Positions 1 through 27,030 of a stretch of 27,030 bases of DNA are shown in pieces. This DNA comes from Macrostomum lignano. Taxonomy: Eukaryota. Where the stretch lies: positions 1-27,030 of the forward strand of contig NIVC01005072.1 in NCBI GenBank assembly GCA_002269645.1, given 5' to 3'. The notes below the pieces were generated by a model. It saw nothing but the letters and a program-made list of their open reading frames with translations, was not told where the DNA came from and made no database searches. The translations under genes and the position numbers were made by a program. Numbering within the stretch: the stretch's first letter is position 1; each line of letters begins with the position of its first letter.

Positions 1-1054
<1,054 letters not shown>

Positions 1055-1742: not shown

Positions 1743-2353
1743 GGCAATGCTGGATGTTGTGTCATTTGGACAATGCTGGATGTTGTGTCATTTGGACAAT
1801 GCTGGAAGTTGTGTCATTTGGACAATGCTGGATGTTGTGTCATTTGGACAATGCTGGATGTTGTTTCAGTTGGACAATGCTGGATGTTGTGTCATTTGGA
1901 CAATGCTGGATGTTGTGTCAGTTGGGCAATGCTGGATTTTGTCTCAGTTGGGCAATGCTGGATGTTGTGTCAGTTGGACAATGCTGGATGTTGTGTCATT
2001 TGGACAATGCTGGATGTTGTGTCATTTGGACAATGCTGGATGTTGTGTCAGTTGGGCAATGCTGGATTTTGTCTCAGTTGGGCAATGCTGGATGTTGTGT
2101 CATTTGGAAAATGCTGGATGTTGTGTCAGTTGGACAATGCTGGATGTTGTGTCATTTGGAAAATGCTGGATGTTGTGTCATTTGGACAATGCTGGATTTT
2201 GTGTCAGTTGGACAATGCTGGATGTTGAGTCATTTGGACAATGCTGGATGTTGTGTCAGTTGGACAATGCTGGATGTTGAGTCATTTGGGCAATGCTGGA
2301 AGTTGTGTCATTTGGACAATTCTGAATGTTGTGTCATTTGGGCAATGCTGGAT
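1743..2353 (+). repeat. 26-bp minisatellite, about 23 copies
   Basis: Unit caatgctggatgttgtgtcatttgga. The 26-aa periodicity (3 units) in all three + frames shows the overlapping ORFs are repeat artefacts. Confidence 0.97.
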
Positions 2354-3734
2354 CAAGGACTACTAGCAGTATAGAAGTCCTTATGCTGGATGTTTTATCA
2401 TGTTGACGCTTTTTAAATACTTTCTGCTGGCTGACGCCGGCGCCCCAGATTCGGTCGACCTCTAAGTTCGCAATCAAGCCCTGAAGCGCGCCCTGTGACA
2501 CTGTTCACAAGACCAACTCACTTTGAATAGCAACATTCTATATCTAAACGGTCGCTACTGTGTTTTTCATAGGAAATATTTATTCGCCTTCGACCCTCTA
2601 GCATATATTTTCCCTCAAGGCTTCAACTCTACTTAACGTTTTACACATCGTTTATCTGGCTTCTACGAACGTTTTTATTTCCTTCTTTAGCGACTGGGCC
2701 TAATACTAATTTAAATATTATTGTAAAATCACACAAATCCTACAGGCTTCATGAAGAAATGTGCGATGGGAGTTGTTCAAACCATCCACGTCAATGATTT
2801 TCTAATCCGCGATACGCGATTGGCTGCGGATGGGGCAGCATCCCTCCCTACCCCACATTAGAATTTCCTATGTATACAAGCAACTGGAATAAATGCTGGA
2901 TATTTTTCACGCGCTAATCATCATTCAGGTCAAGTCCGAGGTTCTACATAACATTTACGCTGGTAAGTTGCCTATGGTTTTCCTTTAAGCTATTTTTACT
3001 GATGCATGAAGTCAAGCGTGCTTCTTCTTGTCTGTTTGAGTTGGAAACTATTCTGTTAGAGCAGCTAGTCATTTACCTAATTTGTCAAGTCAGCCTGCTC
3101 ATTCAACCATGTAGTTGTTTCGTCTCCCTGCTTTGTACTTGTGATGCTGGCTGATTCTTGGCGGAGAGGCTTGGGTCTTAGCTACTACGGTCAAAGTGTT
3201 GAGTGTTTTTTCAAAGGTACAACCCTACATGTATCTCAGACACAAAATGTAATTCAGATTCAAGTTCTTTCAAGAAACATTGATTAGACTACGAAAGCCG
3301 TGAGAACTGTCGCATGGGAAGTGTTCCATCGAGCTGGGGAGATGATGCATTATCGATTGCTTGAGATTGGTTTGAGACCCAGTCTCATTCTAGAATATCA
3401 AATCGGCATTTTAAGTCCAAGCTTATTTTAAAATCCCTAAAGAATCACGAGATCAACTGGTTGTTTCGATTACAGATCCCCAAGCTTACCCAGTCGCTTG
3501 CTTGTCTGTCATCATGCATATCGCTGATCGATATCTCCAGAACAGGCCTCCATTTTCTGAGCTGCGTTGATTCCGTCGTGTTTCCGATTTCTTGTCACAT
3601 TCAATTTCGAGCACAGTGCGAGAAGACCAATCGTCTCTATACAGAAGCTATTCGTATTCCATCTGTTTTGAACAAAATTTCAGCTACTTCGGTCAGAAGA
3701 ACAACAAAACCGCAAAGTGAGCTTAAGAGTAGCA

Positions 3735-3926
3735 ATGGACGCTACGGACACGCCAGAGTGCGAGCAGCTCGCCTCCGAGTTCGTCAATTCTTCAACACCC
3801 GTGGTTGGAGTTCGGGCCAGCTTCGATTCGTCAAACGCCCTACTGATCATGTTCATCATCGGCTGCGTATCCGTGATGGTGGCCAAGCTGTTCCAGCTTC
3901 TCACGAGTCAAGTCTATCAGCAGATG
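3735..3926 (+). CDS. DUR3: DUR3-like exon 1 (N-terminus and first hydrophobic segment)
   Basis: ATG at 3735, MDATDTPECEQ...LLIMFIIGCVSVMVAKLF...QQM, donor ATG|GTGAGT at 3927, phase 0. Confidence 0.75.
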
Positions 3927-6900
3927 GTGAGTCGTGTACGCAGATTCAAGTGCTTCAAAAAATGAGGCTACAGTTAATTGTTATTCCGTAAGTATGGTAG
4001 CAATTCGTTCATCCTATAAAGATAGTGCTTAGCTCATTAAGTTCGTTAAAAACATTCTTAAGTTATCCCAGTGTTTGACGTACATGTAACTTTAGACTTA
4101 GCTGAGATGTGAACTCTAATCAGCCATTCGTCAATGAAGTTTGCTGGTGCTGCTTACAATCCGCGGAGGCGAGCATCCTGGAGCACTAACATTCGCTCGT
4201 AGGCACAAGCCAAGCGCCAAAGTCAGCAAGAAGACCAAATCACATCCCAGATATATGTAACCACGCAGGACACGGGCGACAACTCCTTCGACGCTGGTGG
4301 CAACGTGAGCGTCGGCCTCACGGCTGCAACGCTGGTGTCGCAGTGGACCTGGGCAGCCACTTTGCTCCAGTCCTCTTCGGTGGCCAGCAAGTACGGCATC
4401 TCCGGACCGTTCTGGTACGCGTCTGGCGCCACGATCCAGCTGCTGTTGTTTGCTATGATCTCCGTACAGTTGAAGATTCGAGCACCCGGTGCTAAGACCT
4501 TCCTGCAGGTGATCTGGGCCAGGTTCGACAAGAAGACCCACGTCACATTCTGCGTTTTCGCTTTGGCTACTAATATCATTGTCACGTCAATGTTGATGCT
4601 GGGTGAGGCAACGGCAGTATTAACCAATTAGTTGTCAGTTATTCGCACTGTGTCCAATTATCTTCGATTGTCAGTGAATTAAGCTGAAAATTGTCAACCA
4701 ATCAAAGTACAAGACACAAAGATTGCAATCAAGACTCGAGGAAAATATTATCTTTTTGTTTAGAGTTCCCCAAAAACTGGATAAACTGAATATACGAGAT
4801 CCCTTTTTCGTAGATAGAAGATTAACTGAGACAAATAATAATTGATAAAATTGTGCATTAAAATGCAGTAAAAAACGTTCCGACAGTCTCCGAAATCCAT
4901 GTGACGACAGATATGGACTTGACCTTGGCCCTAAAACTCCAAAAGAGATGACCAGAGTAGAGCATACCCCCAAGTGTATCTAGAAGCAGAGAGTAAAGCT
5001 CTTTCTTTTTAAAAATAAAAATAGAAAGCAAGAAGAGCATCATTAAAAGTCTGACTTGAATGCTTCAAGAAAGTTTAAAAAATGGTAGCTAGTAATTGAC
5101 TAATAGATTCTACAACGTTTTATAAGCTTGTTCTTCAAATCATTCAAATGACTTGCCATCATTATTCCACTCCCTCACCTTAATGAAGGCGGAACAGCCG
5201 TGCTTACAAACCTAATTAAAGACTTCTCAGTTGAGTACGCCACCTGCCTGGTGTGCGCTGTGATCGGCTCCTATACCTTCATCGGAGGGCTTGGCGCCAC
5301 CTTCTACATGAGCTACTGTGCTACGGCCATCATGTTTGTCATTCTGCTGATCTGCATCATGCAGGTGTACCACGTTGAGACGCCGGGCAACCCGTTAGGT
5401 ACGTAAACTGTTTTCCAGTGAGCTCATGAAATGATTTGTTAATTAACCGGTAGAAACTGCCCATGCAACCCGTTTGGTCAGGCTCCGTGGCCAAGGTCTA
5501 CCAATACGTGGACTGCCTGACGGGCCCGGTCGGAAACGAGGGTCGCAGCTACTTGACTCTTATTAGCATCGACGGTCTTATGTTTGGCATAATTAATATT
5601 ATCGGTAAGAACTTTAAGTACGAGGTAGCTGCACTACAAAAAGGCACCAGGAATATTTGATTGAAATACCTCCGAATGAAAAAGCAATTTTTTCTTAAAG
5701 AAAGAACAACGCATCCTTGTCTGGAGAAAGCGCAGTGATTTCAACAAATTTTGGTTCTGGCAATAAGCTTTTTAAAAAAAGCATTAAAATCATTCTGATA
5801 TCATCTGATCATGTATGGGGATATTGACGTTTAAACGCGTGGACTGTACACCTATCAGTCAAGTTCGTGCGTTAGCTGGTCAATCCAGCTTCGTATGCAA
5901 TGTACAGTATAATTTGCAGCCAAGTCGTCGTATAGACAAAGCGCTCGTCCCTTCTTGGCGAGATCTGGGCTGTCCTATCTATGGACTGAACTACCAAAGA
6001 GAGTAATATTTAATCGAATCATTAATAACCTCATTGACAGGCAACTTCGGCACCGTATTCGTCGACCAGTCCTTCTGGCAGTCTAGCGTAGCCGCCAAAC
6101 CGAAGACCGGCGCCCTTGGATTCTTGTCTGGCGGCGTGGTCTGGTTCGCCATACCGTTCTGCTTTGCCACAGCGATGGGATTGGGCTACATCAGTTTGAG
6201 CTTCATGCAGGGCCAGCCTATTCTATCCGATGCTGACATTGACAAGGGTGGGCACGGTTGAGAAAACTACGTTGGCTATTGGTTTCTTGGATTAAATTTT
6301 CATTTTGGTGAACTAACCTGACGTGCATTTCAATTTCGAATCTTGCACTTCTAGGACTCGTTCCGCCAGCAGTGGCTCAGAGACTACTTGGCCTGCCGGG
6401 CGAACTAATGATCGTGGTCATGCTGATCATGGCGGTCATATCGACTGGCTCTTCTGAGATCATCGCCGTGGTTTCCATCCTTATCTACGATGTGTACGCT
6501 GTCCATCTGAAGGTCCGTGTTAGCCTTTAATTACACATTTCTGTTGTAATCCTACCAATCAATCGTCATAGCTAGTATTGCTTTTGTCAGCCTAACTGAG
6601 AATAAAGCCATCCAAAGTGAGAATCCTGCCTACGCTGACTGCGAAGGGCCTGGCTGCGTGCAGCCTTAGTCTATGGGCCATAGACTATAAAGGATAAGCA
6701 AAGTGATAAAAAGCCATCCAATGTGAGAATCGATTGGTCTATGCGTCGTATTCTTTTATTTTTATACCTTCTGAGCCATATGACTAGCCAATAGCCAATA
6801 GCTTGAACGGAATAACGGAAACAGGAACACACTGGATGATGTCTTTTTAAAACTTTGCTTGTCCTTTATAGTCTATGGCTCATAGACTAGGCTGGACGCA

Positions 6901-9900
6901 GCTAGGCCCTTCGTATTCAGCGTAGGCAGGATTCTCACTTTGGATGGCTTTATTCTCAGTTAGGCTGACAAAACCTATACTCGTAAATGTTGAATTACTC
7001 TTGCAAAATAGCCGACCGACAAATCCGGAAAATTCAATTGCCATTCCCGCAGCCATACAGAGCGGCCCTGGACTCGAACTCCTGCATTCTGTGCGGCAAA
7101 GCCAAGGGTCGGATGGCGAATCCTAGGGACAAGTGCTCCTGCGAGAGCATGACGTTCTGCCTGGAGTGCAAGCAGGACAATGAGTGAGCAACTAAGACGA
7201 AATCAACTCTACTTTGAAACTTATTGTAGATTGTTTATACGAAGGAGAAAAAACTCGACCTTTTTGAGTGCTTTCAGCCTTTCGGTGTCAAAGATAAGCC
7301 ATTGACAATAACAGAAATAACTGTTTCACATCAGTGAACAAGATAAAAAAACCTGTTTCTAAGCAAAAAATAATGTTCCTCTGTAATGCTTTTTCTGATA
7401 AATGCGAGTCTTAAGAAAATGGTCTTTGCTTAGGGTTGGATTCAAGGACTACACAAGTCGAAGGACAGGAAACAACGTTTCTTGGAAAATTTAGGAGGCA
7501 GGATTTACTTACCGACAAAATACGTTATTCAGATAAGCAGGTTTTCATTTTTCAGCACAAAAATTGACATTGCTTTTGATAGAAGGGAGACCCAATGCTC
7601 CTCTTTTGACATCTCTTGCCTTTCTCATAGCTCTATTGATATTCATAAAGCTTTTAGTTTAGAAAAAAGGATTCTGCAAATTTTAAATCCTACGTACAAT
7701 CGTGCAAGTACTGTGCCTAAAAATCAAATGCATGGCAAAGCTCGACTCATTGGCTTTATGAATCCATTTTATCATCCTTAGCTTAATGACTGAGTAACAA
7801 AATGTGTTACAGATAGATTTCTAAATCCAATCAGATTTTTAGGATTCTTAGGGAAAGTCGCTTATAGATGGAAAGGCTTGTAGGGAATTGCTGAGATGTC
7901 AAGGCAAATAGGTTTCGCTTCGAAGGAGGACAAGATTGCTAGTAGAATCATTTTTTCTGAACGAAAAGCTTTATTATGAATATCAATAGAGCTATGAGAA
8001 AGGCATATCAAAAGATGAGCTCTGGGTCTGCCTCCTATCAAAAGCGATAGCAATTTCTGTGCTGAAATATGAAAACCTCCTATCTCTCCGTGATGTATTT
8101 TGTCGGTAGAACCTTCCTCGTAAAATTTTCCAAGAAATGTACTTTCCCTTCCTTCTACTTGAGCAGTCTTTGGTTGGAAGGAGATCATGATCCACCGGAA
8201 CTATTCTACGAGTGAGCAGTGATTATCCTGTAGTAGCCATGGCACGAAGGCTTAAGCAAATGTTCGGAAAGCATAGTGATTGATACATTGGGAAAATCCA
8301 CTGAATTCGTAGATAGTCGTTTTACATCATAATTTTTACTTTGTTATATTGATCTTAATTAACACTTAAACCTTCACCCAAACTGCAGAGCCATCGCCAA
8401 CAATAAGCGAGCCTTGAAGCCGGCCTACAAGTGCAAAACTCACGGCGCCTATCGAAGCTACAAAGACTACCTGAGCGCCATGAAGGACTGGTGCATTGTG
8501 TGGACCACGCTGGCCATCATACCCATGACTTTCGTTCTGAACTTCATGCAGATCTCGCTAGGCTGGCTGTACCTGTTCATGGGCGTGCTAATTGGCTCGG
8601 CCGTGGCGCCGATCTGCCTGAGCATGTGCTGGGCCAGGCTGACTGGCAAAGCCATGGTCGCTGGCTCGGTGTCGGGCACGGTGCTGGGCCTCGTCGCCTG
8701 GCTCACCACGGCTGCGTTCATGGAGGGCGGCCTGGGGCAGTTCATGAAGAGCACGGGCTCGAACGAGGCCATGCTAGCTGGCAATCTCGTGTCTATGGGA
8801 CTCGGCCTCATAGTCACAGTGGTTGTTACCATGGTAACTAATCGGGATTTTCAACCGGAGAAAGCGGCCGAAGTCTGGGAGACAACTCGAGACATTGACA
8901 ATCCGCTGCACCCGTGGTCCGAGCTGTACGCCAAGTGAGTTCCAGCTGTAAATGCATGCAATGGCCACTGCAACTAATGCCGTAGACAGCTTTGGCTTTC
9001 AATACAAGCTCAGACTTCGCATCGTTGAATGGGCAAAATCATTTGCAACAATGACTGACTGTATAGGCCAGAGGCGGGAGAAAGGAGGTGAGGGAACAAA
9101 GGAGAAGAAAGAAGACGAGAGGAGGGATAAAATTGAAGAGGGGAGAGGAGAAGGGAGAGGAGAGGAGATTAGAGAGAAGGTAGCTGAGAAGAGACACAAA
9201 CTTTGAGCCCGAAGGCCGGATAGAGAGGCTTCGCACGGGCCAATCTCTGATTTACAAGCTCGAAAGTTGGTGCCAACGTTAGTCCGATAGTGGAAGCGGA
9301 ATGGAGCGTTAGTCCCTTGTGTGTCGCTAGTGAAAGTCAATGATATCCTGTTCAACAGTCAACGATGTGACCTTTCCAACGATAGAAGAAGCGACAATTT
9401 ACAAAGAAAAATTCGTTAGTATTTGAATTTTTTATCAAAGGAGATCCGTCTCTGGGATCACCTGTGGGCGCCTATCAATCATTTCATGATTAACAGTGGA
9501 GTAACTTTTTCCAGACGAATATAATGTCTCCCTTCGAATCATTCGTGGTATTTCAAGGCCAGATTAACCTGACGTCAAAGCTCAAAGCTGTAGCCATGTG
9601 AAAAGCCAGCTCAAGTATCATGTATTTCGGTCCACACGGATGTTTCAAAAGTCATGCTAGCCGCATTGGCACCAAAGAACGGAACATTCTAGTTACTAAG
9701 GATGTAGCGACTTTTTGCATCTTGGCGGGTTTCATTTTGCGGCTTCAATGTCATTTTAGTATAGCTGGGCTATTTCGGTCGAGCCATTCATCTAGTTAGT
9801 CTCTATGAAGGTTAATTGCGCGCTAGTAGAGGAGGAGTTTGTCAAGAAAAATCAAACTGATACACCGATGATGAATGCCATCGGGCATGGGTGAGCAGTT

Positions 9901-14433: not shown

Positions 14434-14748
14434 CTAACTAGTTTTCTTATCCCCTTTGGGATCGACAAATTTGAATCCCCGTTTAGCCAAGTCAGCTTTC
14501 GCCTCGTCAATCTCTCTGACCAGTTCCGAGTGCGCCTCTGGACAGTCGTTGAACATCAGCACTCGATACACGATGGTCAGAGCTGAGGCCAGCCCGAACA
14601 GTCCGCCTGCGTACAGCGGCAGCCAGTTAGTCACGTGACGGCCCATGGGGGTCAGCTCTACAGGGATCAGGTCGTGCATCAGAGCCAGCCAAAGGGCGAT
14701 GAAACAGCCGCCACCCAGCAGCCACTGCATCAGTTTGGTTAGGGCCAT
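14434..14748 (-). CDS. DPM3: Dolichol-phosphate mannosyltransferase subunit 3, intronless, 104 aa
   Basis: MALTKLMQWLLGGG...WLPLY...YRVLMFNDCPEAHSELVREIDEAKADLAKRGFKF matches the DPM3 pattern (TKLxQW, two TM segments, YRVxxFxDC, coiled-coil tail). The upstream 32 codons of the listed ORF run into a satellite and are excluded. Confidence 0.95.
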   Translation of the reverse strand: MALTKLMQWLLGGGCFIALWLALMHDLIPVELTPMGRHVTNWLPLYAGGLFGLASALTIVYRVLMFNDCPEAHSELVREIDEAKADLAKRGFKFVDPKGDKKTS

Positions 14749-14810
14749 CGGGGCGTCATGAAGAGATTCACGAATCTGAGTACAAGTGCACTTATACCCA
14801 TTCATTCTAG

Positions 14811-15950
14811 TGTACAGTCCTATTATTCGAGTGTATAGTCCCAATCATTCTAGTGTACAGTCCCTATTATTCTAGTGTACAGTCCTTATTATTCTAGTGT
14901 ACAGTCCTTATTATTCTAGTGTACAGTCCCTATTATTCTAGTGTACAGTTCCTACCATTATAGTGTACAGTCCCTATCACTATTGTGTACAGACCCTATC
15001 ATTCTAGTGTACAGTCCCTACCATTCTAGTGTACTGCAGTCCCTACCATTCTAGTGTACATTCCCTATCATTCTAGTGTACAGTCCCTATTATTCTAGTG
15101 TACAGTCCCTATTATTCTAGTGTACAGTCCCTATTATTCTAGTGTACAGTCCCTATTATTCTAGTGTACAGTCCCTATTATTCTAGTGTACAGTCCCTAC
15201 CATTCTAGTGTACAGTCCCTATCACTCTAGTGTACAGACCCTATCATTCTAGTGTACAGTCCCTATCATTCTAGTGTACAGACCCTATCATTCTAGTGTA
15301 CAGACCATACCATTCTAGTGTACAGACCCTATCGTTCTAGTGTACAGACCATACCATTCTAGTGTACAGACCCTGCCATTCTAGTGTGCAGTCCCTATCA
15401 TTCTAGTGTGCAGCCCCTATCGTTCTAGTGTGCAGTCCCTATCATTCTAGTGTGCAGCCCCTATCGTTCTAGTGTACAGACCATACCATTCTAGTGTACA
15501 GACCCTGCCATTCTAGTGTACAGACCATACCATTCTAGTGTACAGCCCCTATCGTTCTAGTGTACAAACCATACCATTGTAGTGTACAGACCCTGCCATT
15601 CTAGTGTGCAGTCCCTATCATTCTAGTGTGCAGCCCCTATCGTTCTAGTGTACAGACCATACCATTCTAGTGTACAGACCCTATCGTTCTAGTGTATACA
15701 GACCCTATCATTCTATTGTACAGACCCTGCCATTCTAGTGTGCAGTCCCTATCACTCTAGTGTACAGACCCTGCCATTCTAGTGTGCAGTCTCTATCACT
15801 CTAGTGTACAGACCCTGCCATTCTAGTGTGCAGTCCCTATCACTCTAGTGTACAGTCCCTGCCATTCTAGTGTACAGTCCTTATCATTCTAGTGTGCAGT
15901 CCCTATCATTCTAGTGTACAGACCCTGCCATTCTAGAGTACAGACCAATC
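14811..15950 (+). repeat. 22-bp minisatellite, about 52 copies, between RPB9 and DPM3
   Basis: Unit ttctagtgtacagtccctatta with blockwise variants (gaccctgcca, gaccatacca, gtgcag). Confidence 0.97.
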
Positions 15951-16317
15951 AATTTAGATTTGAAGTAAATAAATTACGAACTTAAAAGTTTCGAAATTAC
16001 AAATTGATTATGTTTACAAGGAAAATTTAATTTAGGTTTCAATTAGTAGAACAGATAAGCACATTTAGGGTTATTAACTACAATGAATTCATTGTTTTGT
16101 TGCCAATGAACTCAGAATCGGAGTAATAACAACCGGCAATACAAAAAATGCAAACATTCAAATCAGCTACAATGGCTGCTGTCAGTTCAATAATGAAAAA
16201 ATTTAAGGCAACCCAAAATAACTACCAAAGCACAAGTCCACATAATGGGATCTGCAGATCTCATATAGCCATAAAAATCAAATATGTTATTTCACATGTA
16301 TTAGACCTTCGGACCTT

Positions 16318-17190
16318 CAGATCCCAGTTCACACAGATCCAAGTTCACAGATCCCAGTTCACACAGATCCAAGTTCACAGATTTGAGTTCACAGATCCAA
16401 GTTGACACACAGGAAAATCTCGCAGACCCCAGTTCACACACAGGAAAATCTCGCAGATCCCAGTTCACACACAGGAAAATCCCGCAGATCCCAGTTCACA
16501 CACAGGAAAATCTCGCAGATCCCAGTTCACACACAGGAAAATCTCGCAGATCCCAGTTCACACACACAGGAAAATCCCGCAGATCCCAGTTCACACACAG
16601 GAAAATCCCGCAGATCCCAGTTCACACACAGGAAAATCCCGCAGATCCCAGTTCACACACAGGAAAATCTCGCAGATCCCAGTTCACACACAGGAAAATC
16701 CCGCAGATCCCAGTTCACACACAGGAAAATCCCGCAGATCCCAGTTCACACACAGGAAAATCCCGCAGATCCCAGTTCACACACAGGAAAATCTCGCAGA
16801 CCCCAGTTCACACACAGGAAAATCTCGCAGATCCCAGTTCACACACAGGAAAATCTCGCAGATCCCAGTTCACACACAGGAAAATCTCGCAGATCCCAGT
16901 TCACACACAGGAAAATCCCGCAGATCCCAGTTCACACACAGGAAAATCTCGCAGATCCCAGTTCACACACAGGAAAATCTCGCAGATCCCAGTTCACACA
17001 CAGGAAAATCCCGCAGATCCCAGTTCACACACAGGAAAATCTCGCAGATCCCAGTTCACACACAGGAAAATCTCGCAGATCCCAGTTCACACACAGGAAA
17101 ATCTCGCAGACCCCAGTTCACACACAGGAAAATCTCGCAGATCCCAGTTCACACGTAGGAAATCCCGCAAACCCCAGTTCTCAGCAGTTC
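16318..17190 (+). repeat. 31-bp minisatellite, about 25 copies plus a degenerate lead-in, directly after the RPB9 stop
   Basis: Unit agatcccagttcacacacaggaaaatc(t/c)cgc; 31-aa periodicity in the artefact ORFs. Confidence 0.97.
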
Positions 17191-17464
17191 ACTGAGCAGA
17201 CGTATCAGTCCACTTGTAGGCGCAGCCCTCATTGCGGCACACATAATAGAGCTTCATGCCCTCCTCGGCCCGTTTACTCTGCGACTGGAAGAACACAGCG
17301 TCCTTGTGGTGGCACATGGGACAGGGGTGCTCGTTGGTCCTGGGCAGAGTTGGGTCGTGAATAACGTCGGCCACAATTTGGGTCAGCTCGTCGACGTCGT
17401 GCTCAACTTTGTTGACGTAGACACACGGGTTCAATGCTGGCTGGGAGTAGCCGCAGTTGCGGCA
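17189..17464 (-). CDS. POLR2I: RPB9 exon 2
   Basis: Strong pyrimidine tract and CTGCAG| acceptor; [19 protein letters not shown]...KWTDTSAQ*. Confidence 0.96.
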
Positions 17465-19237
17465 CTGCAGTGGGAAGATGGAGAAAGGAGAAATGAGTTA
17501 AAAAAACAGCTGAATACACAAGCAAGCACATGCAGCTTATTACAACTGAACATGTCTCTATGACAGGGTGTCCTCATGGATTTTATGATGGGGACAAAGC
17601 CAAGAATTCTACGACTAATTTCCTATACATTATACATTTTGGCGCCGCAGACAGGCAATCATTGTGGCGCCGCAGGCACTCATTTTGGCGCCACAGGCAC
17701 TCATTTTGGCGCCACAGGCACTCATTTTGGCGCCACAGGCACTCATTTTGGCGCCACAGGCACTCATTTTGGCACTGCAGGCACTCATTTTGACACCACA
17801 GGCACTCATTTTGGCGCCGCAGGCACTCATTTTGGCGCCGCAGGCAGGCACTCATTTTGGCGCCGCAAGCAGGCACTCATTTTGGCGCCGCAGGCAGGCA
17901 CTCATTTTGGCGCCAGAGGCACTCATTTTGGCGCTACAGGCATTCATTTTGGCGCCGCAGGCAGGCACTTATTTTGGCGCCGCAGGCAGGCACTCATTTT
18001 GGCGCCGCAGGCACTCATTTTGGCGCCGCAGGCAGGCACTCATTTTGGCGCCAGAGGCACTCATTTTGGCGCTACAGGCATTCATTTTGGCGCCGCAGGC
18101 AGGCACTTATTTTGGCGCCGCAGGCAGGCACTCATTTTGGCGCCAGAGGCACTCATTTTGGCGCTACAGGCATTCATTTTGGCGCCGCAGGCAGGCACTT
18201 ATTTTGGCGCCGCAGGCAGGCACTTATTTTGGCGCCGCAGGCACTCATTTTGGCGCCGCAGGCAGGCACTTATTTTGGCGCCGCAGGCAGGCACTCATTT
18301 TGGCGCCGCAGGCAGGCACTCATTTTGGCGCCGCAGGCAGGCACTTATTTTGGCGCCGCAGGCAGGCACTCATTTTGGCGCCGCAGGCAGGCACTCATTT
18401 TGGCGCCGCAAGCAGGCACTCATTTTGGCGCCGCAGGCAGGCACTTATTTTGGCGCCGAAGGCAGGCACTCATTTTGGCGCCGCAGGCAGGCACTCATTT
18501 TGGCGCCGAAGGCAGGCACTCATTTTGGCGCCGAAGGCAGGCACTCATTTTAGCGCTAAAGGCAGGCACTCATTTTAGCGCTAAAGGCACTCATTTTGGC
18601 GCCGCAGGCACTCATTGTGGCGCCGCAGGCACTCATTTTGGCGCCACAGGCACTCATTTTGGCGCCGCAGGCACTCATTTTGGCGGCGCAGGCACTCATT
18701 TTGGCGCCGCAGGCAGGCACTTATTTTGGCGGCGCAGGCAGGTACTCATTTTGGCGCCGCAGGCACTCATTTTGGCGCCAGAGGCAGGCACTCATATTAG
18801 CGCTAAAGGCACTAATTTTGGCGCCGCAGACAGGCACTCATTATTATGGTACCTTATAGCGCCGAAGGTGATATATTTGGCGCCCTAATGCAAAATTCTA
18901 TCACGGGCTACAGTGTGGGGCGGGAGGGCAAAGCATTTACTGTCCACCATGTCTCTGCCGCTAACAATGTCCATGCTCCATGGCCTCATCATGTCAACCC
19001 GATAAAGTTTCAGAGCAGTTTAGGTTAAGCTTAAATTGCTACTGTTAGTAGTAGTCGTAACAAATAACTAACCGAATAAACCAACTGCCTATTGGCCTTA
19101 TCCTCCCTGGGATACAGCATATTGTTGCACTCCTGGCAGAACAGAATGCCGACAAATTTCAGACCGCCGGACGCACCGTCGTCGCCCTCCTTGTCCCTGT
19201 TGCTGGACACCGAGGCCGCGTCATCAAAACCGTCCAT
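17189..19237 (-). CDS. POLR2I: RNA polymerase II subunit RPB9; join(19237-19073,17464-17189), 146 aa
   Basis: [20 protein letters not shown] / CRNC / [53 protein letters not shown]; both zinc ribbons intact; phase-0 intron TCG|GTTAGT...CTGCAG|TGC. Confidence 0.97.
17637..18895 (+). repeat. 21/25-bp minisatellite filling most of the RPB9 intron
   Basis: Unit ggcactcattttggcgccgca (21 bp) and a 25-bp variant with an extra ggca; all frames open, producing artefact ORFs. Confidence 0.97.
19073..19237 (-). CDS. POLR2I: RPB9 exon 1
   Basis: ATG at 19237 directly preceded by cactaataAG; 55 codons ending QLVYS, then GTTAGT donor. Confidence 0.95.
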
Positions 19238-19344
19238 CTTATTAGTGCAATGAGACGCATGAACACGATTGTAGAAAGGCGCTATTGATGCTACTGCTGT
19301 AGGATTTAAGTAGTATATATAATATAAGATTTAATAAGGACATT

Positions 19345-19770
19345 TCTCGAAAGCTGATGAGGATTCCTGAATGCTTATGGGAATTCCCGAGTGATGATGG
19401 GGATTGCCCGAATGCTGATGCGGATTCCCCACATGCTGGTGGAGATTCTCGAAAGCTGATGGGGATTCCCAAATGCTTATGGGGATTCCCCAAGTGATGA
19501 TGGGATTCCCGAATGCTTATGGGGATTCCCCAAGTGATGATGGGATTCCCGAATGCTTATGGGGATTCCCCAAGTGATGATGGGATTCCCGAATGCTTAT
19601 GGGGAATACCCAAATGATGAGGAGGATTCCCGAATGCTTATGGGGATTCCCCAAGTGATGATGGGATTCCCGAATGCTTATGAGGATTCCCCAAGTAACG
19701 ATGGGGATTCCCGAACGCTTATGGGGTATCCCCGAGTGATGATGGGATTCCCGAATGCTTATGAGGATTA
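19345..19770 (+). repeat. 40-bp minisatellite (dimer of two GGGATTCCC-containing 20-mers), about 10 copies
   Basis: Unit ggggattccccaagtgatgatgggattcccgaatgcttat, exact at 19481, 19521 and 19561; degenerate flanks. Confidence 0.96.
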
Positions 19771-20455
19771 GACGGTGCTGATCAGGACAATCCCATACTT
19801 TAATTAAAAAAGTTGAACAACGCAACAAAAATACTTGTTGAGGCTGGCTCAAATTAGCGTAGAATAAATAATTACTTATTCATGAATGGCATTGAGCAGA
19901 AAATGTCAAAAATACATTAAATGTAAGTGACCAATTTTGTACGTCAGCCGAAAAAGCATTGAAGTCAGCGCGAAAAAATCCCTATTCAAATTGAACACAC
20001 GGGGAAAATCGATCAAAGCTACAATTAAAAACTTTGACGCCGTCTAAGTTATAAGACAGGCATTAAAAAACTAAAATTGACTCGCATATGCCATGCTTGA
20101 ATTGCACATATGCAGTAGAAATATTACCTCACGTCAAAGTCAAACACACTAGTTGAGTATTAAATTTATCTAACAAAAATAATATGTTGTCAATTTGCTA
20201 GTAATTCCCTATTATGACTACTGCCGTACTAGTGACAATGAGTAGTAAAACGGGGACACGGCTAATGGAGCCTGCTATTAAGGCCAGGGGAGGCTAAGAT
20301 TACGAAGCATACAAAAATAAACAAAAATGCACGCCTATAACTATATATTATAGATTAGATGAAGCAGCTAAAAGTACAATCAGTACTAGCTTGCTAATAT
20401 ATAAACTCATTATCCAGTGTCTTGTCAAGTCCGGCGAGAGAGCCGGCCAGTTCAC

Positions 20456-22885
20456 CTATTTCTTCCGGCTGCGCAGACCGATCCGCCTACCTGGGGCAGG
20501 TTTCGCCGACTCGTCGCCGTCGCCTCCCCGACGTCGTTGACGACGCGACGACTGACGACTCTCGACGATGTCCGTGCGGACGCTCAGAGAGCTGCTGGCG
20601 CCGCTGGCCGCGCTGTCCGGCGAGCCGCCGACGAATTCGGACGACGCCGCTCGGCTGGCTGGTCGGCCGCGACGTCGACGACCGGCGACGGCGGAGCGAC
20701 TTCCGACAACAGCGGAGGAGCTGCTGCGGACCGAGTCTGGCGACGCGGCGGTGGCCTCCTCTGGCAGGGCTGGCAGATCGTCGGCTGCGGCGGCCGAAGC
20801 GACGGAGGCTCGCCGACCGCCGACAGTGGCTGCACGCGGCGGCTGCTGCGGCGACCACGCAGGCGGTTCGACCGTCTGATAGACGGGCCGGCCGGGGCGC
20901 TGGCGATGGACATCTCCGAGTCCAAGGAGCTGGCGCTGGTGTTCAACAGATCCTCCTCATCGGCGACTGTCGCGGCTGTCGAAGCGGACGCCGACTGTTG
21001 CGTGGACTGCGACTGCGGAGGAGGTGGCGGAGGCGGCATCGCCAAGTCAGCTTCGTCAACGGACTGGACTGAGGCGCGGCGAGAGCTCCGACGTAGCTTT
21101 TGCTGCGGCGGTGGCTGAGCCAGTGACGGCGCTGCCGAGTCGGGGTAGGCGGCGCCGACATGGACACCCGTCGCCGAAGCTGGTATTTCACCTCCGGCGA
21201 CGCCGCCATCGTCTCTTCGGTAGCGTCTTCGGCTTCTGGCTGTTCTACATCCGCCTTGTCGTCACTGTCCGACTCGCTGGATGACGAAGCGGCAGCCTCC
21301 TCGGCGGCCGCCACCGTCTCGTCCTGCTTTGACACTCGCCGCCGACGACTTCGCTGACCGACGGCGCGCTTCGGTCCCGTTTTACGACGTCCATCAGCGG
21401 TGGCGGCGGCGCTACGTCGCGTCTTCGGCACCGTAGAGGCAGCATCCGCTTCCGTCTTCACATCCTCCGCATTCTCCTCCTTACTAGCATTGTCAGCCTC
21501 CTTTTCCTTTGCGTCTGGCTTCTCTGCGTCAGCACTGCTTTGCGTCGACTCCGACAAACGTCGAGGTCGTCGACGACCACGCCGACCTACTGAACGTCTT
21601 GTCGATATCGTTTCTTCCTCTTCGTCTTCCTCCCCCACTTCCTCATCGACGTCCTCCTGCCTGGATGCAGAGGGCCCTGCCACAGGCGGCTGATTAGAAA
21701 AGAAGCTGTCAGTTTCGAAGTGGCTTTCCGTTTCACGATCCCCGGAGATATTCGCCGTTTGTTCCGATTGCCGCTCATCGGCCGTAGCAACCGCTTCCTC
21801 TTGCATGCCGGCGGAACTAATATCCATGCTGACCTCCTGCACGACCGTCTTCTGACCGAAATCGCCCGCGTCCGCGGCTGGACGACTAGCGCCGGTGGAT
21901 GGGCTGACGCTTTGCGGCGACGTCGAATGGACGACAATTGGTGAGCCGGCGGGACGTCGAACTACTACTACTGATATTACTGACGGCGACTGCTGCTGCT
22001 GGGACTGAGGTGAGAGTGGGTGCGACTGTTGATCTTGCGAGGACACTCGCTGAGTCGGCTGCTGAAGCGGAGGCGACACCTGCTGAGTTGACTGCTGAAG
22101 CGGAGGCGACACCTGCTGAGTCGGCTGCTGAAGCGGAGGCGACATTCGCTGAGTCGGCTGCTGAAGCGGAGGCGACATTCGCTGAGTCGGCTGCTGAAGT
22201 GGAGGCGACACCCGCTGAGTCGGCTGCTGAAGTGGAGGCGACACCCGCTGAGTCGGCTGCTGAAGTGGAGGCGACACCCGCTGAGTCGGCTGCTGAAGTG
22301 GAGGCGACACCCGCTGAGTCGGCTGCTGAAGTGGAGGCGACACCCGCTGAGTCGGCTGCTGAAGTGGAGGCGACACCCGCTGAGTCGGCTGCTGAAGTGG
22401 AGGCGACACCCGCTGAGTCGGCTGCTGAAGTGGAGGCGACACCCGCTGAGTCGGCTGCTGAAGTGGAGGCGACACCCGCTGAGTCGGCTGCTGAAGTGGA
22501 GGCGACACCCGCTGAGTCGGCTGCTGAAGCGGAGGCGACATTCGCTGAGCCGATCGGATAAATCGAGCCCGACCCAGCTTGGTCGGCGGACTGAAAACGA
22601 AGTCAGCGCTGCTAGCAGACGCCGTGTCAACCGCCGCTGACTGTACAGCTGCTAGCCGAATATTCGGCAAAGGCTTAGCGAAGGTGAACGAGGAAGCGGA
22701 AGGCTGCTCGGATTCGATTCTGGGCGCAGCGGCGGATGCGGCACCGGGGGAAACGGAGCGGCGGCCAAGCAGGTCGCTGCGAGCCATTGAAGCTACGGGA
22801 CTGGCAGCGGTGACGGCTGGGCTACAGAAGGGAACTGATACGACTGATTCTGGCGGAGGCGGCGTGGGCCGCTCGACAACCGGAG
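20456..22885 (-). CDS. Orphan gene, long terminal exon (two apparent -1 frameshifts near 21143 and about 20835)
   Basis: The 655-aa ORF reads as plausible protein to ...YQLRRRVSMSAPPTP, then the 21045 frame (PPPPPPPQSQ...DEEDLLNTSASS), then a third frame lacking a start codon (ADDLPALPEEATAASPDSVRSSS...RSRKK*). Confidence 0.7.
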
Positions 22886-25454
22886 CTGGAATGGCGACAG
22901 GAGAGTTCAACGAGGCTCAGTTAGTTTATCGCAAAGTAGGACACAGTACGAATGAGAGCTTTGCTTTTCTATCATAATTTATCCGATGACATTTTAATAA
23001 GCATCTATTTTGAGTTTCGTGAGCATTCGCATTATGAGCACTCTATCTTTAAGCATTCACTCTATGAGAATTTGCTTTATGAGCATTCGCTCTATGAGCA
23101 TTAGCTCTATGAGAATTTGCTCTATGAGCATTCGCTCTATGAGCATTAGCTCTATGAGAATTTGCTCTATGAGCATTCGCTCTATGAGCATTAGCTCTAT
23201 GAGAATTTGCTCTATGAGAATTTGCTCTATGAGCATTCGCTCTATGAGCATTCGCTGTATGAGAATTCGCTCTATGAGAATTTGCTCTATGAGAATTCGC
23301 TCTATGAGCATTCGCTCTATGAGCATTCGCTCTATGAGCATTCGCTCTATGAGCATTCGCTCGCTCTATGAGCATTCGCTCTATAAGAATTCGCTCTATG
23401 AGCACTCGCTCTATGAGCATTCGCTCGCTCTATGAGCATTCGCTCTAAAAGCATTTGCTCTATGAGCATTCGCTGTATGAGAATTCGCTCTATGAGAATT
23501 TGCTCTATGAGAATTCGCTCTATGAGCATTCGCTCTATGAGCATTCGCTCTATGAGCATTCGCTCTATGAGCATTCGCTCGCTCTATGAGCATTCGCTCT
23601 ATAAGAATTCGCTCTATGAGCACTCGCTCGCTCTATGAGCATTCGCTCTAAAAGCATTTGCTCTATGAGCATTCGCTCTATGAGCATTCGCTCGCTCTAT
23701 GAGCATTCGCTCTATAAGAATTCGCTCTATGAGCACTCGCTCTATGAGCATTCGCTCGCTCTATGAGCATTCGCTCTAAAAGCATTTGCTCTATGAGCAT
23801 TCGCTGTATGAGAATTCGCTCTATGAGAATTTGCTCTATGAGAATTCGCTCTATGAGCATTCGCTCTATGAGCATTCGCTCTATGAGCATTCGCTCTATG
23901 AGCATTCGCTCTATGAGCATTCGCTCGCTCTATGAGCATTCGCTCTATAAGAATTCGCTCTATGAGCACTCGCTCGCTCTATGAGCATTCGCTCTAAAAG
24001 CATTTGCTCTATGAGCATTCGCTTTATGAGCATTCGCTCTATGAGCATTCGCTTTATGAGCATTCGCTTTATGAGCATTCGCTCTATGAGCATTCGCTTT
24101 ATGAGCATTCGCATTAGACTTCGTGCTGAGGAATTATCGCTCCAACTGAACAGATTAAAAAAAGCTTAATAAAAGTCACACTACCAATAACAAAGACCCC
24201 CATCGCTTACAGGTGTCCTCTGGCGTTACAAAGACATCAGACGACGAAGCCGGCGACACGGCAGCGCTTCCACGGTTAGACTGGCTGACGTCATCGACAG
24301 AGTTTATTTTCGGCGGCACAGCCAACCCTTGAGGTCGAGGCGGCTTTGTTGCCGAAGTGCCGCTGTCATCTGGTGAAGATAAAAAATTGTGCAACTACAG
24401 ATGTACGACTTTACCTGAACAAGTTCTGATCAGCTCATTTTTATGAAGTGTCTCAAAAGACGAAAATGTTTTGGTTTTTTATCAGATAATAAGTGGTGGC
24501 TGCCTTGGAGGCGATGCAACAAAAAATCAGCCTAAAAATCAGCCGTGTACTAACCGCTGCCAATTATGCTTAACTTAAAATCCAAATGTTTCCAATCTCA
24601 CCTGGATTGGAAAATATAGGTCGCTTTCACAAGCTCAAAACATCACAAGCTTGAAGCTTCACAAGCTCACAGCTTCATCACAAGCTCGAAACTGCACAAG
24701 CTCAAAGCTTCATCACAAGCTCAAAGCTTCATCACAAGCTCAAAGCTTCATCACAAGCTCAAAGCTTCATCACAAGCTCAAAGCTTCATCACAAGCGCAC
24801 AGCTTCAGCACAAGCTCAAAGCTTCACAAGCGCACAGCTTCATCACAAGCTGTTCAGAAAAACTTCGAGACAAACTCAAAATTCCGCTTCACGAAACGCC
24901 CCAGAAACTCACAAACTCAAAATTCCGCGCTCACGAAACGCCCAGAAACTAAAAACTAGACCTTGACACGTGATCTGGCAGAATAACTCCACCTGAAAAC
25001 AAACGCTCACCAGACGACAGTGCAGTCAAGTCGGGGCCAACCGCCGCAGTCGCTTCGGCCATTTCAACATCGAATGACCGGCTACTGCTGAGCTTGGCCT
25101 TCCCGACGCTTTCACTGCTGCAGCGGCGCGGGGCCGGAGGCGGACTGCTCGCGCTTGTAGGACGGAGAGTCGAAGCTGGTCTCGTCCAGATCTGCACCGA
25201 TGGAAAAGACTTGAGCTATAATGATCCATTGTGTTAAAATTTGCCATAATCAATGAACACCAACCAATCGGTATGGGAGACGGGCCTGGCGCCGGCGAAG
25301 GAGACGCAGCAGTTGGCGGCGGAGGTCCGGGAGTTGCACGACGTTGCATTGGCTGAGAATCTGAAGGCTGCCGCTGCTCCGGACTGGCGTCCTCAACGGC
25401 GTCGGCAAACGCGCAGCCGTCCAGCGGGGCTGTGCGATCGCTGATGCTGATTGC
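20456..25454 (-). CDS. Hypothetical large low-complexity (S/P/A/R/Q/E-rich), probably nuclear protein; model join(25454-25265,25215-25011,24369-24211,22885-20456), about 990 aa if three 1-nt frameshifts are repaired
   Basis: GC-rich coding-like blocks bounded by GT-AG sites. Phases match at 25011/24369 and 24211/22885 (CTAAC branch upstream of 22886). Basic clusters and an acidic tract; stop TAG at 20458-20456 after RRIGLRSRKK. No family recognised. Confidence 0.7.
22047..22549 (-). repeat. In-frame 33-bp coding minisatellite, 15 copies of R(V/M)SPPLQQPTQ
   Basis: Arg codons at 22544 and 22049 are 495 nt apart (15 x 33). Confidence 0.95.
23019..24114 (+). repeat. 15-bp minisatellite in the orphan gene intron, with higher-order duplication
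   Basis: Unit tatgagcattcgctc; marker variants ataagaattcgc and ctctaaaagcatttg each recur four times. Confidence 0.97.
24211..24369 (-). CDS. Orphan gene internal exon
   Basis: ttttttatcttcaccAG| acceptor and T|GTAAGC donor, both phase 1; DDSGTSATKPPRP...VSPASSSDVFVTPEDT. Confidence 0.8.
24627..24851 (+). repeat. 19-bp minisatellite, about 11 partly degenerate copies
   Basis: Unit aagctcaaagcttcatcac. Confidence 0.9.
24871..24953 (+). repeat. Two-copy tandem duplication of about 41 bp
   Basis: acaaactcaaaattccgc(t/g)(t/ct)cacgaaacgccc(c)agaaact occurs twice. Confidence 0.85.
25011..25215 (-). CDS. Orphan gene exon (5' frame ambiguous)
   Basis: TATAG| acceptor at 25216 and G|GTGAGC donor at 25010. 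The 3' part reads SSESVGKAKLSSSRSFDVEMAEATAAVGPDLTALSS; the 5' part is best in another frame (VFSIGADLDETSFDSPSYKR) if spliced from the upstream exon. Confidence 0.65.
25265..25454 (-). CDS. Probable most-upstream visible exon of the orphan gene
   Basis: cctcAG| at 25455, open frame AISISDRTAPLDG...SQPMQRRATPGPPPPTAASPSPAPGPSPIPI, then an AT-rich 49-nt GT...AG segment (25264-25216). Confidence 0.5.
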
Positions 25455-25505
25455 CTGAGGCCTCGGCTCTTAGTCCGGCTGTCGAGTTTTCCGCAGTATG
25501 GACAC

Positions 25506-27030
25506 TATTGATAATTAGGGAAACACCTGCGAGGATATGAGATATTGGATAATTAGGGAAACACCTGAGGATATGAGATATTGATAATTAGGGAAACACC
25601 TGAGGATTATGAGATATTGATAATTAGGGAAACACCTGAGGATATGAGATATTGAATAATTAGGGAAACACCCGATGAGGATATGAGATATTGATAATTA
25701 AGGAAACACCTGCGGATATGAGATATTGATAATTAGGGAAACACCCGATGAGGATATGAGATATTGGATAATTAAGGAAACACCTGCGGATATGAGATAT
25801 GATAATTAGGGAAACACCCGATGAGGATATGAGATATTGATAAATTAGGGAAACACCTGAGGATATGAGATATTGATAATTAGGAAACACCCGATGAGGA
25901 TATGAGATATTGATAATTAGGGAAACACCTGAGGATATGAGATATTGATAATTAGGGAAACACCTGAGGATATGAGATATTGATAATTAGGGAAACACCT
26001 GAGGATATGAGATATTGATAATTAGGGAAACACCTGGCGGAATATGAGATATTGATAATTAGGGAAACACCTGAGGATATGAAGCATTTGATAATTAGGA
26101 AACACCTGAGGATATGAGATTATTGATAATTAGGGAAACACCTGCGGATATGAGATATTGATAATTAGGGAAACACCCGATAAGGATATGAGATATTGAT
26201 AATTAGGGAAACACCCGATGAGGATATGAGATATTGATAATTAGGGAAACACCCGATGAGGATATGAGATATTGATAATTAGGGAAACACCTGAGGATAT
26301 GAGATATTGATAATTAGGGAAACACCTGAGGATATGAGATATTGATAATTAGGGAAACACCTGAGGATATGAGATATTGATAATTAGGGAAAACCCTGAG
26401 GATATGAGATATTGATAATTAGGGAAACACCTGAGGATATGAGATATTTGATAATTAGGGAAACACCTGAGGATATGAGATATTGATAATTAGGGAAAGC
26501 ACCGCGATGAAGATATGAGATATTGATAATTAAGGAAACACCTGCGGATATGAGATATTGATAATTAGGGAAACAACCTGAGAGATATGAGATATTGATA
26601 ATTAGGGAAACACCTGAGGATATGAGATATTGATAATTAGGGAAACACCCGATGAGGATATGAGATATTGATAATTAGGGAAACACCTGCACGATGAGGA
26701 TATGAGATATTGATAATTAGGGAAACACCCGATGAAGATATGAGATATTGATAATTAAGGAAACACCTGCGGATATGAGATATTGATAATTAGGGAAACA
26801 CCGCGATGAGGATATGAGATATTGATAATTAGGGAAACACCCGATGAAGATATGAGATATTGATAATTAAGGAAACACCTGCGGATATGAGATATTGATA
26901 ATTAGGGAAACACCCGATGAGGATATGAGATATTGATAATTAGGGAAACACCTGAGGATATGAATATTGATAATTAGGAAACACCTGAGGATATGAGATA
27001 TTGATAATTAGGGAAACACCCGATGAGGAT
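25506..27030 (+). repeat. 35/38-bp satellite, about 42 copies, running off the window end
   Basis: Unit gatattgataattagggaaacacctgaggatatga; 38-bp variant with cccgatgagg; sporadic 1-nt indels. Confidence 0.98.

What the first reader, a model, noticed from the sequence alone, without database searches (positions are those of the whole stretch)
14434..25454. Candidate trans-spliced operon: orphan gene -> RPB9 -> DPM3
Three co-oriented genes with little unique DNA between them once arrays are subtracted (about 0.8 kb and 0.4 kb). Each ORF is preceded by an AG acceptor with no evident upstream exon: cctcAG 25455, cactaataAG directly against the RPB9 ATG (19238), and tgtactcAG 14776. All three are in phase 0 with the ORF, as expected if an AUG-terminated flatworm-type spliced leader is added. 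ATTAAA signals lie at 19335 (about 95 nt before the RPB9 acceptor) and 16031 (about 110 unique nt before the DPM3 acceptor, ignoring the array), similar to nematode intercistronic spacing. Caveats: acceptors were chosen by eye and the organism is inferred.
Basis: partly seen in the sequence, partly recalled or inferred. Interest (0 to 1): 0.7.

Follow-up and report, generated by a model that had tools for sequence, protein, structure and literature searches.

The report
Flatworm ELYS–RPB9–DPM3 trans-spliced gene cluster

Summary
The window is the whole 27,030-bp contig NIVC01005072.1 of the Macrostomum lignano Mlig_3_7 assembly.

Three parts of the interpretation fail:
- The "orphan gene" is the last four exons of an ELYS/AHCTF1 homologue. 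Its upstream exons are missing only because the contig ends inside an intronic tandem array, so the AG at 25455 is a cis-splice acceptor.
- The trans-splice acceptors of RPB9 and DPM3 are not at 19238 and 14776. They lie 20 nt and 8 nt upstream of the ATGs (first exon bases 19257 and 14756).
- The spliced-leader (SL) AUG is out of frame at both real sites.

The evidence for the real acceptors comes from four paralogous contigs. One unannotated copy of each gene keeps a canonical TTCCAG| or TTGCAG|. The annotated copies read TTCATG| or TGCATG|, which are the last bases of the SL. This fits the published polishing of the assembly with RNA-seq reads.

Both downstream genes are therefore very probably SL trans-spliced. 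The stop-to-acceptor distances after subtracting arrays are 772 and 427 nt, which meets the published operon criterion for this species (<1 kb). Co-transcription itself was not shown. Novelty is low.

The parts
25506..27020 (.). 35/73-bp tandem array inside an ELYS intron; the contig ends in it
   Evidence: TRF. The same array lies in paralogs L001 and L002, with ELYS exon-like ORF segments upstream of it in L002.
25265..25454 (-). It carries one extra C (~25411) compared with paralogs.
   Evidence: The AG is unchanged in all copies compared, so there is no SL footprint here. It lies inside the span of the ELYS gene models 1..8838 (L002) and 1..6824 (L001).
25011..25191 (-). ELYS exon; two 1-nt deletions (~25129, ~25119) compared with paralogs
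24211..24369 (-). ELYS exon
   Evidence: AG/GT borders and frame continuity into the last exon
20456..22885 (-). Last ELYS exon, ending in stop TAG at 20458-20456. It contains an in-frame 33-nt repeat (PPLQQPTQRVS, 22042-22549). Two 1-nt deletions (~21138, ~20850) break the frame in this copy.
   Evidence: The stop coincides with the annotated ELYS stop of L002 and L007.
19770..20455 (-). Unique AT-rich ELYS 3' UTR / spacer, with ATTAAA at 19804-19799
19344..19769 (.). 20/40-bp tandem array in the ELYS-RPB9 spacer
19330..19335 (-). ATTAAA, 72 nt upstream of the RPB9 trans-splice junction
19258..19261 (-). RPB9 SL acceptor, overwritten in the assembly. The window reads CATG (the last 4 nt of the SL) where paralog L007 reads CCAG within gtgTTCCAG|.
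19238..19257 (-). RPB9 5' UTR (20 nt) after the trans-splice junction
   Evidence: The annotated 5'-partial CDS SHCTNKM of L002 needs a transcript start at -18 to -20.
19073..19237 (-). RPB9 coding exon 1
17465..19072 (-). RPB9 intron (GT..AG) holding a 25-bp tandem array (17635-18842)
17189..17464 (-). RPB9 coding exon 2 with stop TGA
16318..17180 (.). 31-bp (plus 14/30-bp) tandem array starting 9 nt after the RPB9 stop, so inside the presumed 3' UTR
16026..16031 (-). ATTAAA, the candidate RPB9 poly(A) signal
14802..15943 (.). 22-bp tandem array in the RPB9-DPM3 spacer
14757..14760 (-). DPM3 SL acceptor, overwritten in the assembly. The window reads CATG where paralog L001 reads GCAG within ctcTTGCAG|.
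14749..14756 (-). DPM3 5' UTR (8 nt)
   Evidence: The annotated 5'-partial CDS APMALTK of L002 and L007 needs a transcript start at -6 to -8.
14434..14748 (-). DPM3 coding sequence (104 aa, single exon)

Best explanation
The region is the 3' end of the ELYS/AHCTF1 gene followed by RPB9 (POLR2I) and DPM3, all on the minus strand of a M. lignano contig.

RPB9 and DPM3 mRNAs receive the 35-nt spliced leader at canonical YTNCAG acceptors. These are TTCCAG|CGTCTC (first exon base 19257) and TTGCAG|ACGCCC (first exon base 14756). In this contig both acceptors are masked. The bases just upstream of each junction were overwritten with SL bases (..CATG) when the assembly was polished with RNA-seq reads.

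Each acceptor lies a short distance downstream of an ATTAAA that follows the preceding gene. The distance is 72 nt for RPB9, and about 105 nt for DPM3 after subtracting the 22-bp array. Most likely, therefore, the three genes are transcribed as one precursor. That precursor would be resolved by 3'-end cleavage of the upstream mRNA and SL trans-splicing of the downstream one, as described for about 15% of M. lignano genes.

The SL AUG is out of frame at both sites. It opens short upstream ORFs of 33 and 6 codons. The proteins start at their own ATGs.

Status of each step:
- Shown: gene identities, geometry, and SL-directed base changes at the two junctions.
- Inferred from annotation and those footprints: trans-splicing at these sites.
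- Inferred from spacing only: co-transcription.
For: Organism and contig:
- Exact protein and contig matches to Mlig_3_7.

ELYS:
- Gene models with Pfam ELYS-bb and ELYS domains end just upstream of RPB9 in three paralogous contigs, with products of 1554, 2210 and 2290 aa.
- The L002 and L007 stops map to window 20456.

Acceptors:
- In a four-copy alignment of 2,482 unique columns, only 22 vary.
- Six of those 22 fall at positions -2 to -5 of the two junctions, and each changes the base to the SL base.
- The intact AG survives only in the copy where that gene is unannotated: L007 for RPB9 and L001 for DPM3.
- The annotated 5'-partial CDSs of L002 and L007 start exactly where transcripts beginning at -20 (RPB9, L002) and -8 (DPM3, both) would make TransDecoder start them.

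Published methods and criteria:
- Pilon polishing used RNA-seq reads. Gene 5' ends were cut at SL-read peaks by TBONE, and ORFs were called by TransDecoder (PMC5730564).
- The SL sequence, the YTNCAG acceptor motif, the <1 kb repeat-adjusted operon criterion and the ~100 bp mode come from PMC8629364.

Distances and signals.
Against: - No RNA reads could be inspected. Trans-splicing is inferred from annotation 5' ends and assembly footprints.
- No polycistronic RNA or single promoter was shown. About 60% of trans-spliced M. lignano genes are not assigned to operons.
- The real, unadjusted spacers are 1.2 and 2.4 kb and could hold promoters.
- Two annotated CDS starts do not sit at the inferred junctions and are unexplained: L001 RPB9 at -9 and window DPM3 at -3.
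- The ELYS-RPB9-DPM3 order is absent from two cestode genomes.
Confidence: 0.65

Rival explanations
1. RPB9 and DPM3 are SL trans-spliced at the sites inferred here, but each is transcribed from its own promoter in the spacer. The SL replaces a short outron, and the cluster is a tight gene neighbourhood rather than an operon.
For: - Most SL trans-spliced genes of M. lignano (about 60%) are not in operons.
- The physical spacers are 1.2 and 2.4 kb.
- In the paralogs, the locus tags BOX15_Mlig024333g1 and BOX15_Mlig022563g1 are RPB9 models named separately from ELYS.
- The arrangement is not conserved in cestodes.
Against: - After subtracting arrays, the distances from ATTAAA to acceptor (72 and ~105 nt) fall at the ~100 bp mode that characterises operonic pairs.
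- Very little unique sequence lies between the last ATTAAA and each acceptor, which leaves little room for a promoter.
Confidence: 0.27
2. Three SL acceptors at 25455, 19238 and 14776, each in phase 0, so that the SL AUG starts translation. The first gene is an orphan that begins at 25454.
For: The AGs exist and are in phase 0 with open frames. Flatworm SLs do end in AUG.
Against: - 25455 lies inside the ELYS gene model of the paralogs, with exon-like ORF segments upstream of the array in L002.
- Annotated RPB9 CDSs include 9-18 nt upstream of the ATG, so the mRNA does not start at 19237.
- Annotated DPM3 CDSs start at -3 or -6, not at -27.
- Neither TAATAAG nor TACTCAG fits YTNCAG.
Confidence: 0.03
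3. The CATG/GCATG variants at the two junctions are real differences between gene copies, not polishing artefacts, and say nothing about trans-splicing.
For: The copies are separate contigs of a hidden polyploid and do differ elsewhere (16 other variable columns).
Against: - Six of eight positions next to two independent junctions vary, against a background of 0.65% per column.
- All six changes go to the SL base.
- The changes appear only in copies that carry an RNA-based annotation.
- RNA-seq polishing of this assembly is documented.
Confidence: 0.02

Closest known systems
Spliced-leader operons of Macrostomum lignano (Wudarski et al. 2017, PMC5730564; Ustyantsev & Berezikov 2021, PMC8629364)
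   Same: - Same species and same assembly.
- Co-oriented conserved housekeeping genes.
- Downstream genes SL trans-spliced at YTNCAG acceptors.
- Repeat-adjusted spacing under 1 kb and close to the ~100 bp mode.
- Tandem repeats inflate the spacers.
- Three-gene operons make up 18% of the catalogue.
   Different: Nothing substantive. This locus is not named in any text I could search, and its precursor RNA was not seen here.
Caenorhabditis elegans SL2 operons
   Same: About 100 nt between the upstream gene's 3'-end signal and the downstream trans-splice site. Resolution of the precursor by coupled cleavage and trans-splicing.
   Different: M. lignano has one 35-nt SL and no dedicated downstream leader. 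Here, kilobase-scale satellite arrays sit inside the spacers and inside a presumed 3' UTR.
Flatworm SL 3'-terminal AUG used as initiator methionine (recalled from Cheng et al. 2006; related tool paper PMC9851317)
   Same: The M. lignano SL ends in AUG.
   Different: At the acceptors inferred here the SL AUG is out of frame. It opens a 33-codon ORF (RPB9) and a 6-codon ORF (DPM3), both overlapping the true starts.
ELYS/AHCTF1 nucleoporin
   Same: Paralogous gene models carry the ELYS beta-propeller and ELYS domains and have a long disordered C-terminal part.
   Different: The window holds only that C-terminal part. It has no detectable homologues, which is why it looked like an orphan.

Membership tests
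M. lignano SL operon (criteria of PMC8629364) | Immediately adjacent genes in the same orientation, with no opposite-strand gene between them | tested here: met
   ELYS 3' exons, RPB9 and DPM3 are all on the minus strand. Only these three genes are called in the locus.
M. lignano SL operon (criteria of PMC8629364) | The downstream gene is SL trans-spliced | tested here: met
   The evidence is indirect. SL-base footprints lie at -2 to -5 of both junctions, canonical TTCCAG/TTGCAG is retained in one paralog each, and annotated 5' ends lie at the junctions. No reads were inspected.
M. lignano SL operon (criteria of PMC8629364) | Repeat-adjusted intergenic distance below 1 kb | tested here: met
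   Even the stop-to-acceptor distances are 772 and 427 nt after subtracting TRF arrays.
M. lignano SL operon (criteria of PMC8629364) | One promoter and one polycistronic precursor RNA | not testable with these tools
   No RNA-seq, long-read or TSS data were accessible. The RPB9 protein cluster had no transcript-derived members.
Nematode SL2-type operon | A dedicated second spliced leader for downstream genes | not tested
   The literature reports a single 35-nt SL in M. lignano. There is no SL RNA gene in the window (best match 21/35; Rfam none).
SL-AUG-initiated flatworm ORF | The SL AUG is in frame with the main ORF, with no intervening stop | tested here: not met
   At 19257 and 14756 the SL AUG is in phase 2. 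Its ORF ends after 33 and 6 codons respectively.
RPB9 (RNA polymerase II subunit 9) | N-terminal RPB9 zinc ribbon plus C-terminal TFIIS-type zinc ribbon | tested here: met
   PF02150 at 2.1e-13 and PF01096 at 4.4e-12. The protein is 60-71% identical to metazoan RPB9.
DPM3 | Full-length match to the DPM3 family profile | tested here: met
   PF08285 at 1.3e-25, covering profile positions 2-90 of 90.
ELYS/AHCTF1 | ELYS beta-propeller and ELYS helical domain | tested here: inconclusive
   Both domains are present in the paralogous gene models that span the homologous exons. They are absent from the window because the contig is truncated. I could not retrieve the full protein.

The most novel reading that the evidence does not exclude
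The overwritten acceptors may be an assembly-wide artefact. Pilon polishing of Mlig_3_7 with SL-bearing RNA-seq reads may have replaced the AG, and up to three further bases, of many expressed SL acceptors with SL sequence. If so, three things follow. It would depress the published acceptor motif count, where YTNCAG was found at only 9,551 of 21,754 sites. Real acceptors would look non-canonical. And trans-splice sites could be read directly from the assembly by comparing paralogous copies.
Probability: 0.5. Interest if true: 0.3.

Novelty: new member of a known kind. Interest (0 to 1): 0.2.

Why it matters
The biology changes little. SL operons with repeat-inflated spacers are already catalogued genome-wide in this species, and this locus fits the catalogue's own criteria.

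There are two practical points:
- An apparent orphan gene with an unpaired acceptor at the end of a contig should first be checked against paralogous contigs. Here it is simply the tail of ELYS.
- In the Mlig_3_7 assembly, the bases just upstream of expressed SL acceptors can be RNA-derived. Acceptor motifs, splice-site predictions and construct designs that rely on these bases (for example promoter or outron reporters in M. lignano transgenesis) should be checked against genomic reads.

Tried and rejected
- A word-based protein search with the 655-aa ELYS C-terminal ORF was saturated by low-complexity words and returned nothing.
- A 147-aa query built from exon-like segments upstream of the array in L002 found only a 52% identical M. 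lignano paralog, not the annotated ELYS proteins. The exact exon joints upstream of 25454 therefore stay unverified.
- An exhaustive HMMER search with 365 aa of the ELYS tail gave one weak hit (E 2.7e-4).
- Pfam on the L002 upstream exons gave nothing.
- The sigma-70 promoter / intrinsic terminator scan was run, but it does not apply to a eukaryote.
- Synteny: RPB9 loci of Echinococcus and Hydatigera have no ELYS or DPM3 neighbour. Two Logan RPB9 contigs come from unrelated compact genomes.
- Gene-level trans-splicing or operon tables were not held for PMC8629364, PMC5816591 or PMC5730564. No paper text mentions the gene IDs.
- Rfam and tRNA scans of the window were empty.
- The upstream YTNCAG site at 19296 (ctacag|CAGTAG) was considered as the RPB9 acceptor. 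I rejected it as the main site because no copy shows an SL footprint there and the annotated CDSs do not extend to it.
Full report
**What the window is.** The spliced RPB9 product is identical to M. lignano proteins. A 91-aa RPB9 fragment and a 105-aa DPM3 protein of this exact sequence are recorded on a 27,030-bp contig, NIVC01005072.1 of assembly GCA_002269645.1 (Mlig_3_7). The window is therefore that whole contig. It begins in an (AGAT)n microsatellite and ends in a 35-bp tandem array, so both ends are assembly breaks in repeats.

**Checking the observation.**
- The three AGs end at 25455, 19238 and 14776 on the minus strand.
- RPB9 has two exons, 19237-19073 and 17464-17189. They are separated by a GT..AG intron that contains a 25-bp array.
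- RPB9 has both zinc ribbons (PF02150 2.1e-13, PF01096 4.4e-12), and DPM3 (14748-14434) matches PF08285 at 1.3e-25.
- ATTAAA lies at 19335 and 16031, with a third at 19804.
- After subtracting the TRF arrays, the unique DNA is about 0.8 and 0.4 kb, as stated.

**The "orphan gene" is the tail of ELYS.** Three other contigs of the same assembly carry 98-99% identical copies of the locus: L001 = NIVC01004938.1, L002/L006 = NIVC01002208.1 and L007 = NIVC01002317.1.
- In each copy, the gene that ends just upstream of RPB9 has a product of 1554, 2210 or 2290 aa with Pfam ELYS-bb and ELYS domains. Each gene model also runs beyond the fetched locus.
- In L002 the 35-bp array is intronic, and exon-like ORF segments bounded by GT and AG lie upstream of it.
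- The AG at 25455 is therefore an internal cis acceptor. Upstream exons are absent from the window only because the contig stops in the array.
- The window holds four ELYS exons: 25454-25265, 25191-25011, 24369-24211 and 22885-20456.
- Compared with its paralogs, this copy has five 1-nt indels in coding sequence, near 25411, 25129, 25119, 21138 and 20850. That explains the chain of overlapping ORFs and why the deposited annotation has only a 437-aa fragment ending at 20943.
- This C-terminal part has no Pfam domain and no detectable homologue, so by sequence alone it does look like an orphan.

**Where the spliced leader is really added.** The M. lignano SL is CGGTCTCTTACTGCGAAGACTCAATTTATTGCATG, and the top acceptor motif is [T/C]TNCAG. 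In the deposited annotation, gene 5' ends were cut at peaks of SL-trimmed reads (TBONE) and ORFs were called with TransDecoder. TransDecoder extends an ORF to the transcript start when no stop codon intervenes.
- The L002 RPB9 CDS starts SHCTNKM, which means a transcript start at -18 to -20 from the ATG.
- The L002 and L007 DPM3 CDSs start APM, which means a start at -6 to -8.
- In the window, the bases immediately upstream of -20 and -8 are gtgttCATG| and ctcttCATG|, so both end with the last four bases of the SL.

Comparing the four copies settles the question.

| Site | Copy with intact acceptor | Other copies |
|---|---|---|
| RPB9 | L007: gtgTTCCAG\|CGTCTC | window and L001: TTCATG\|; L002: TGCATG\| |
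| DPM3 | L001: ctcTTGCAG\|ACGCCC | window, L002 and L007: TTCATG\| |

- Across 2,482 aligned unique columns, only 22 vary among the four copies. Six of those 22 are at positions -2 to -5 of these two junctions, and each change converts the base to the SL base.
- The canonical AG survives only in the copy where that gene is not annotated: RPB9 in L007, and the frameshifted DPM3 in L001. This pattern holds in eight of eight cases.
- The simplest reading is that abundant SL-bearing RNA reads overwrote the last bases of the outron.
- These footprints mark the true junctions: first exon bases 19257 (RPB9) and 14756 (DPM3).
The DPM3 models start downstream of his.

**Consequences for the SL-AUG idea.** Joining the SL to the inferred junctions puts its AUG in phase 2 at both genes. 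It opens a 33-codon ORF that overlaps the RPB9 start, and a 6-codon ORF (MTPRWP) that overlaps the DPM3 start. The proteins must start at their own ATGs. The phase-0 coincidence came from AGs chosen by eye.

**Is it an operon?** Ustyantsev and Berezikov defined M. lignano operons on this same assembly. Their criteria are adjacent co-oriented genes, a downstream gene that is SL trans-spliced, and a repeat-subtracted intergenic distance under 1 kb. The distribution of such distances has a mode near 100 bp. About 15% of genes qualify, and 18% of operons have three genes.
- Here even the stop-to-acceptor distances qualify: 1198 nt (772 unique) and 2432 nt (427 unique).
- ATTAAA at 19335 ends 72 nt before the RPB9 junction.
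- ATTAAA at 16031 lies about 105 unique nt before the DPM3 junction once the 22-bp array is removed.
- By the published criteria, ELYS-RPB9-DPM3 is an operon.
- A polycistronic RNA or a single promoter was not shown and could not be tested. No transcript-derived sequences for these genes were reachable, and no gene-level tables are held.
- I put co-transcription at about two in three. The main rival is three closely packed genes with their own promoters, the downstream two still being trans-spliced.

**Other context.**
- Array lengths differ between the paralogous copies while the unique segments are nearly identical. The distance from the RPB9 ATG to the DPM3 ATG is 4489 nt in the window, 4587 in L001, 4956 in L002 and 4490 in L007. 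This fits the published view that repeats accumulate neutrally in operon spacers.
- The gene order is not found next to RPB9 in Echinococcus or Hydatigera.
- The window contains no SL RNA gene, no Rfam match and no tRNA.

**Unexplained.** Two deposited CDSs do not start at the inferred junctions. These are L001 RPB9 (TNKM, transcript start at -9 to -11) and window DPM3 (PM, start at -3 to -5). Possible causes are secondary peaks from multi-mapped or over-trimmed SL reads, or the filtering applied for GenBank submission. I could not test either.

**Verdict.** The first gene, all three acceptors and the in-frame SL-AUG idea are wrong. The locus is an unremarkable member of a catalogued class. 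The only item of some technical interest is the SL footprint left in the assembly by RNA-seq polishing.

Noticed in passing
window 19258-19262 and 14757-14760 (minus strand); L001, L002, L007 at the homologous sites: Assembly bases just upstream of SL junctions are replaced by SL bases (CATG or GCATG) in every annotated copy, and are intact (CCAG or GCAG) in the unannotated copy. This looks like an artefact of polishing Mlig_3_7 with RNA-seq reads. It may bias published acceptor-motif counts.
   Followed up: yes
window ~25411, ~25129, ~25119, ~21138, ~20850: Five 1-nt indels in ELYS coding exons compared with paralogous contigs break the reading frame in this copy. They are either uncorrected long-read errors in a redundant contig or decay of a duplicate gene.
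   Followed up: partly
L001 ~14630 (homologous to window 14716): The DPM3 copy on NIVC01004938.1 lacks one G and is frameshifted after 11 codons. It is not annotated, and it is the only copy that keeps the genomic TTGCAG acceptor.
   Followed up: partly
window 22042-22549 (minus strand): A 33-nt in-frame coding repeat (about 15 copies of PPLQQPTQRVS) lies in the ELYS C-terminal exon. The deposited 437-aa model spans 1611 nt and therefore skips 297 nt (nine repeat units) there. That suggests copy-number differences between the transcript and this contig.
   Followed up: no
window 4305-11500 (plus strand): Several exons of a sodium:solute symporter family gene (PF00474, 1.1e-07 on concatenated ORFs) converge on DPM3. 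No gene is called there in the deposited annotation of this contig or of L002.
   Followed up: partly
window 10849-11090 and 12562-12810; L002 ~590-900; L001 1198-1439: A dispersed repeat of about 240 bp, roughly 90% identical between copies, gives similar ORF translations such as ...LAPILQLGELK.C.ELSVLLKDTNCS.... It looks like a SINE-like element, but ARAGORN finds no tRNA in the window.
   Followed up: no
window 1-1054 and 25506-27020: Both contig ends lie in tandem repeats, (AGAT)264 and a 35/73-bp array. The contig boundaries are therefore assembly breaks, not biological limits.
   Followed up: yes
window 19238-19257 (minus strand): The 20-nt RPB9 5' UTR (CGTCTCATTGCACTAATAAG) loosely resembles parts of the SL (CGGTCTC..., ...ATTGCA). 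This might cause SL over-trimming, and might explain the alternative annotated 5' end at -9 in L001.
   Followed up: no
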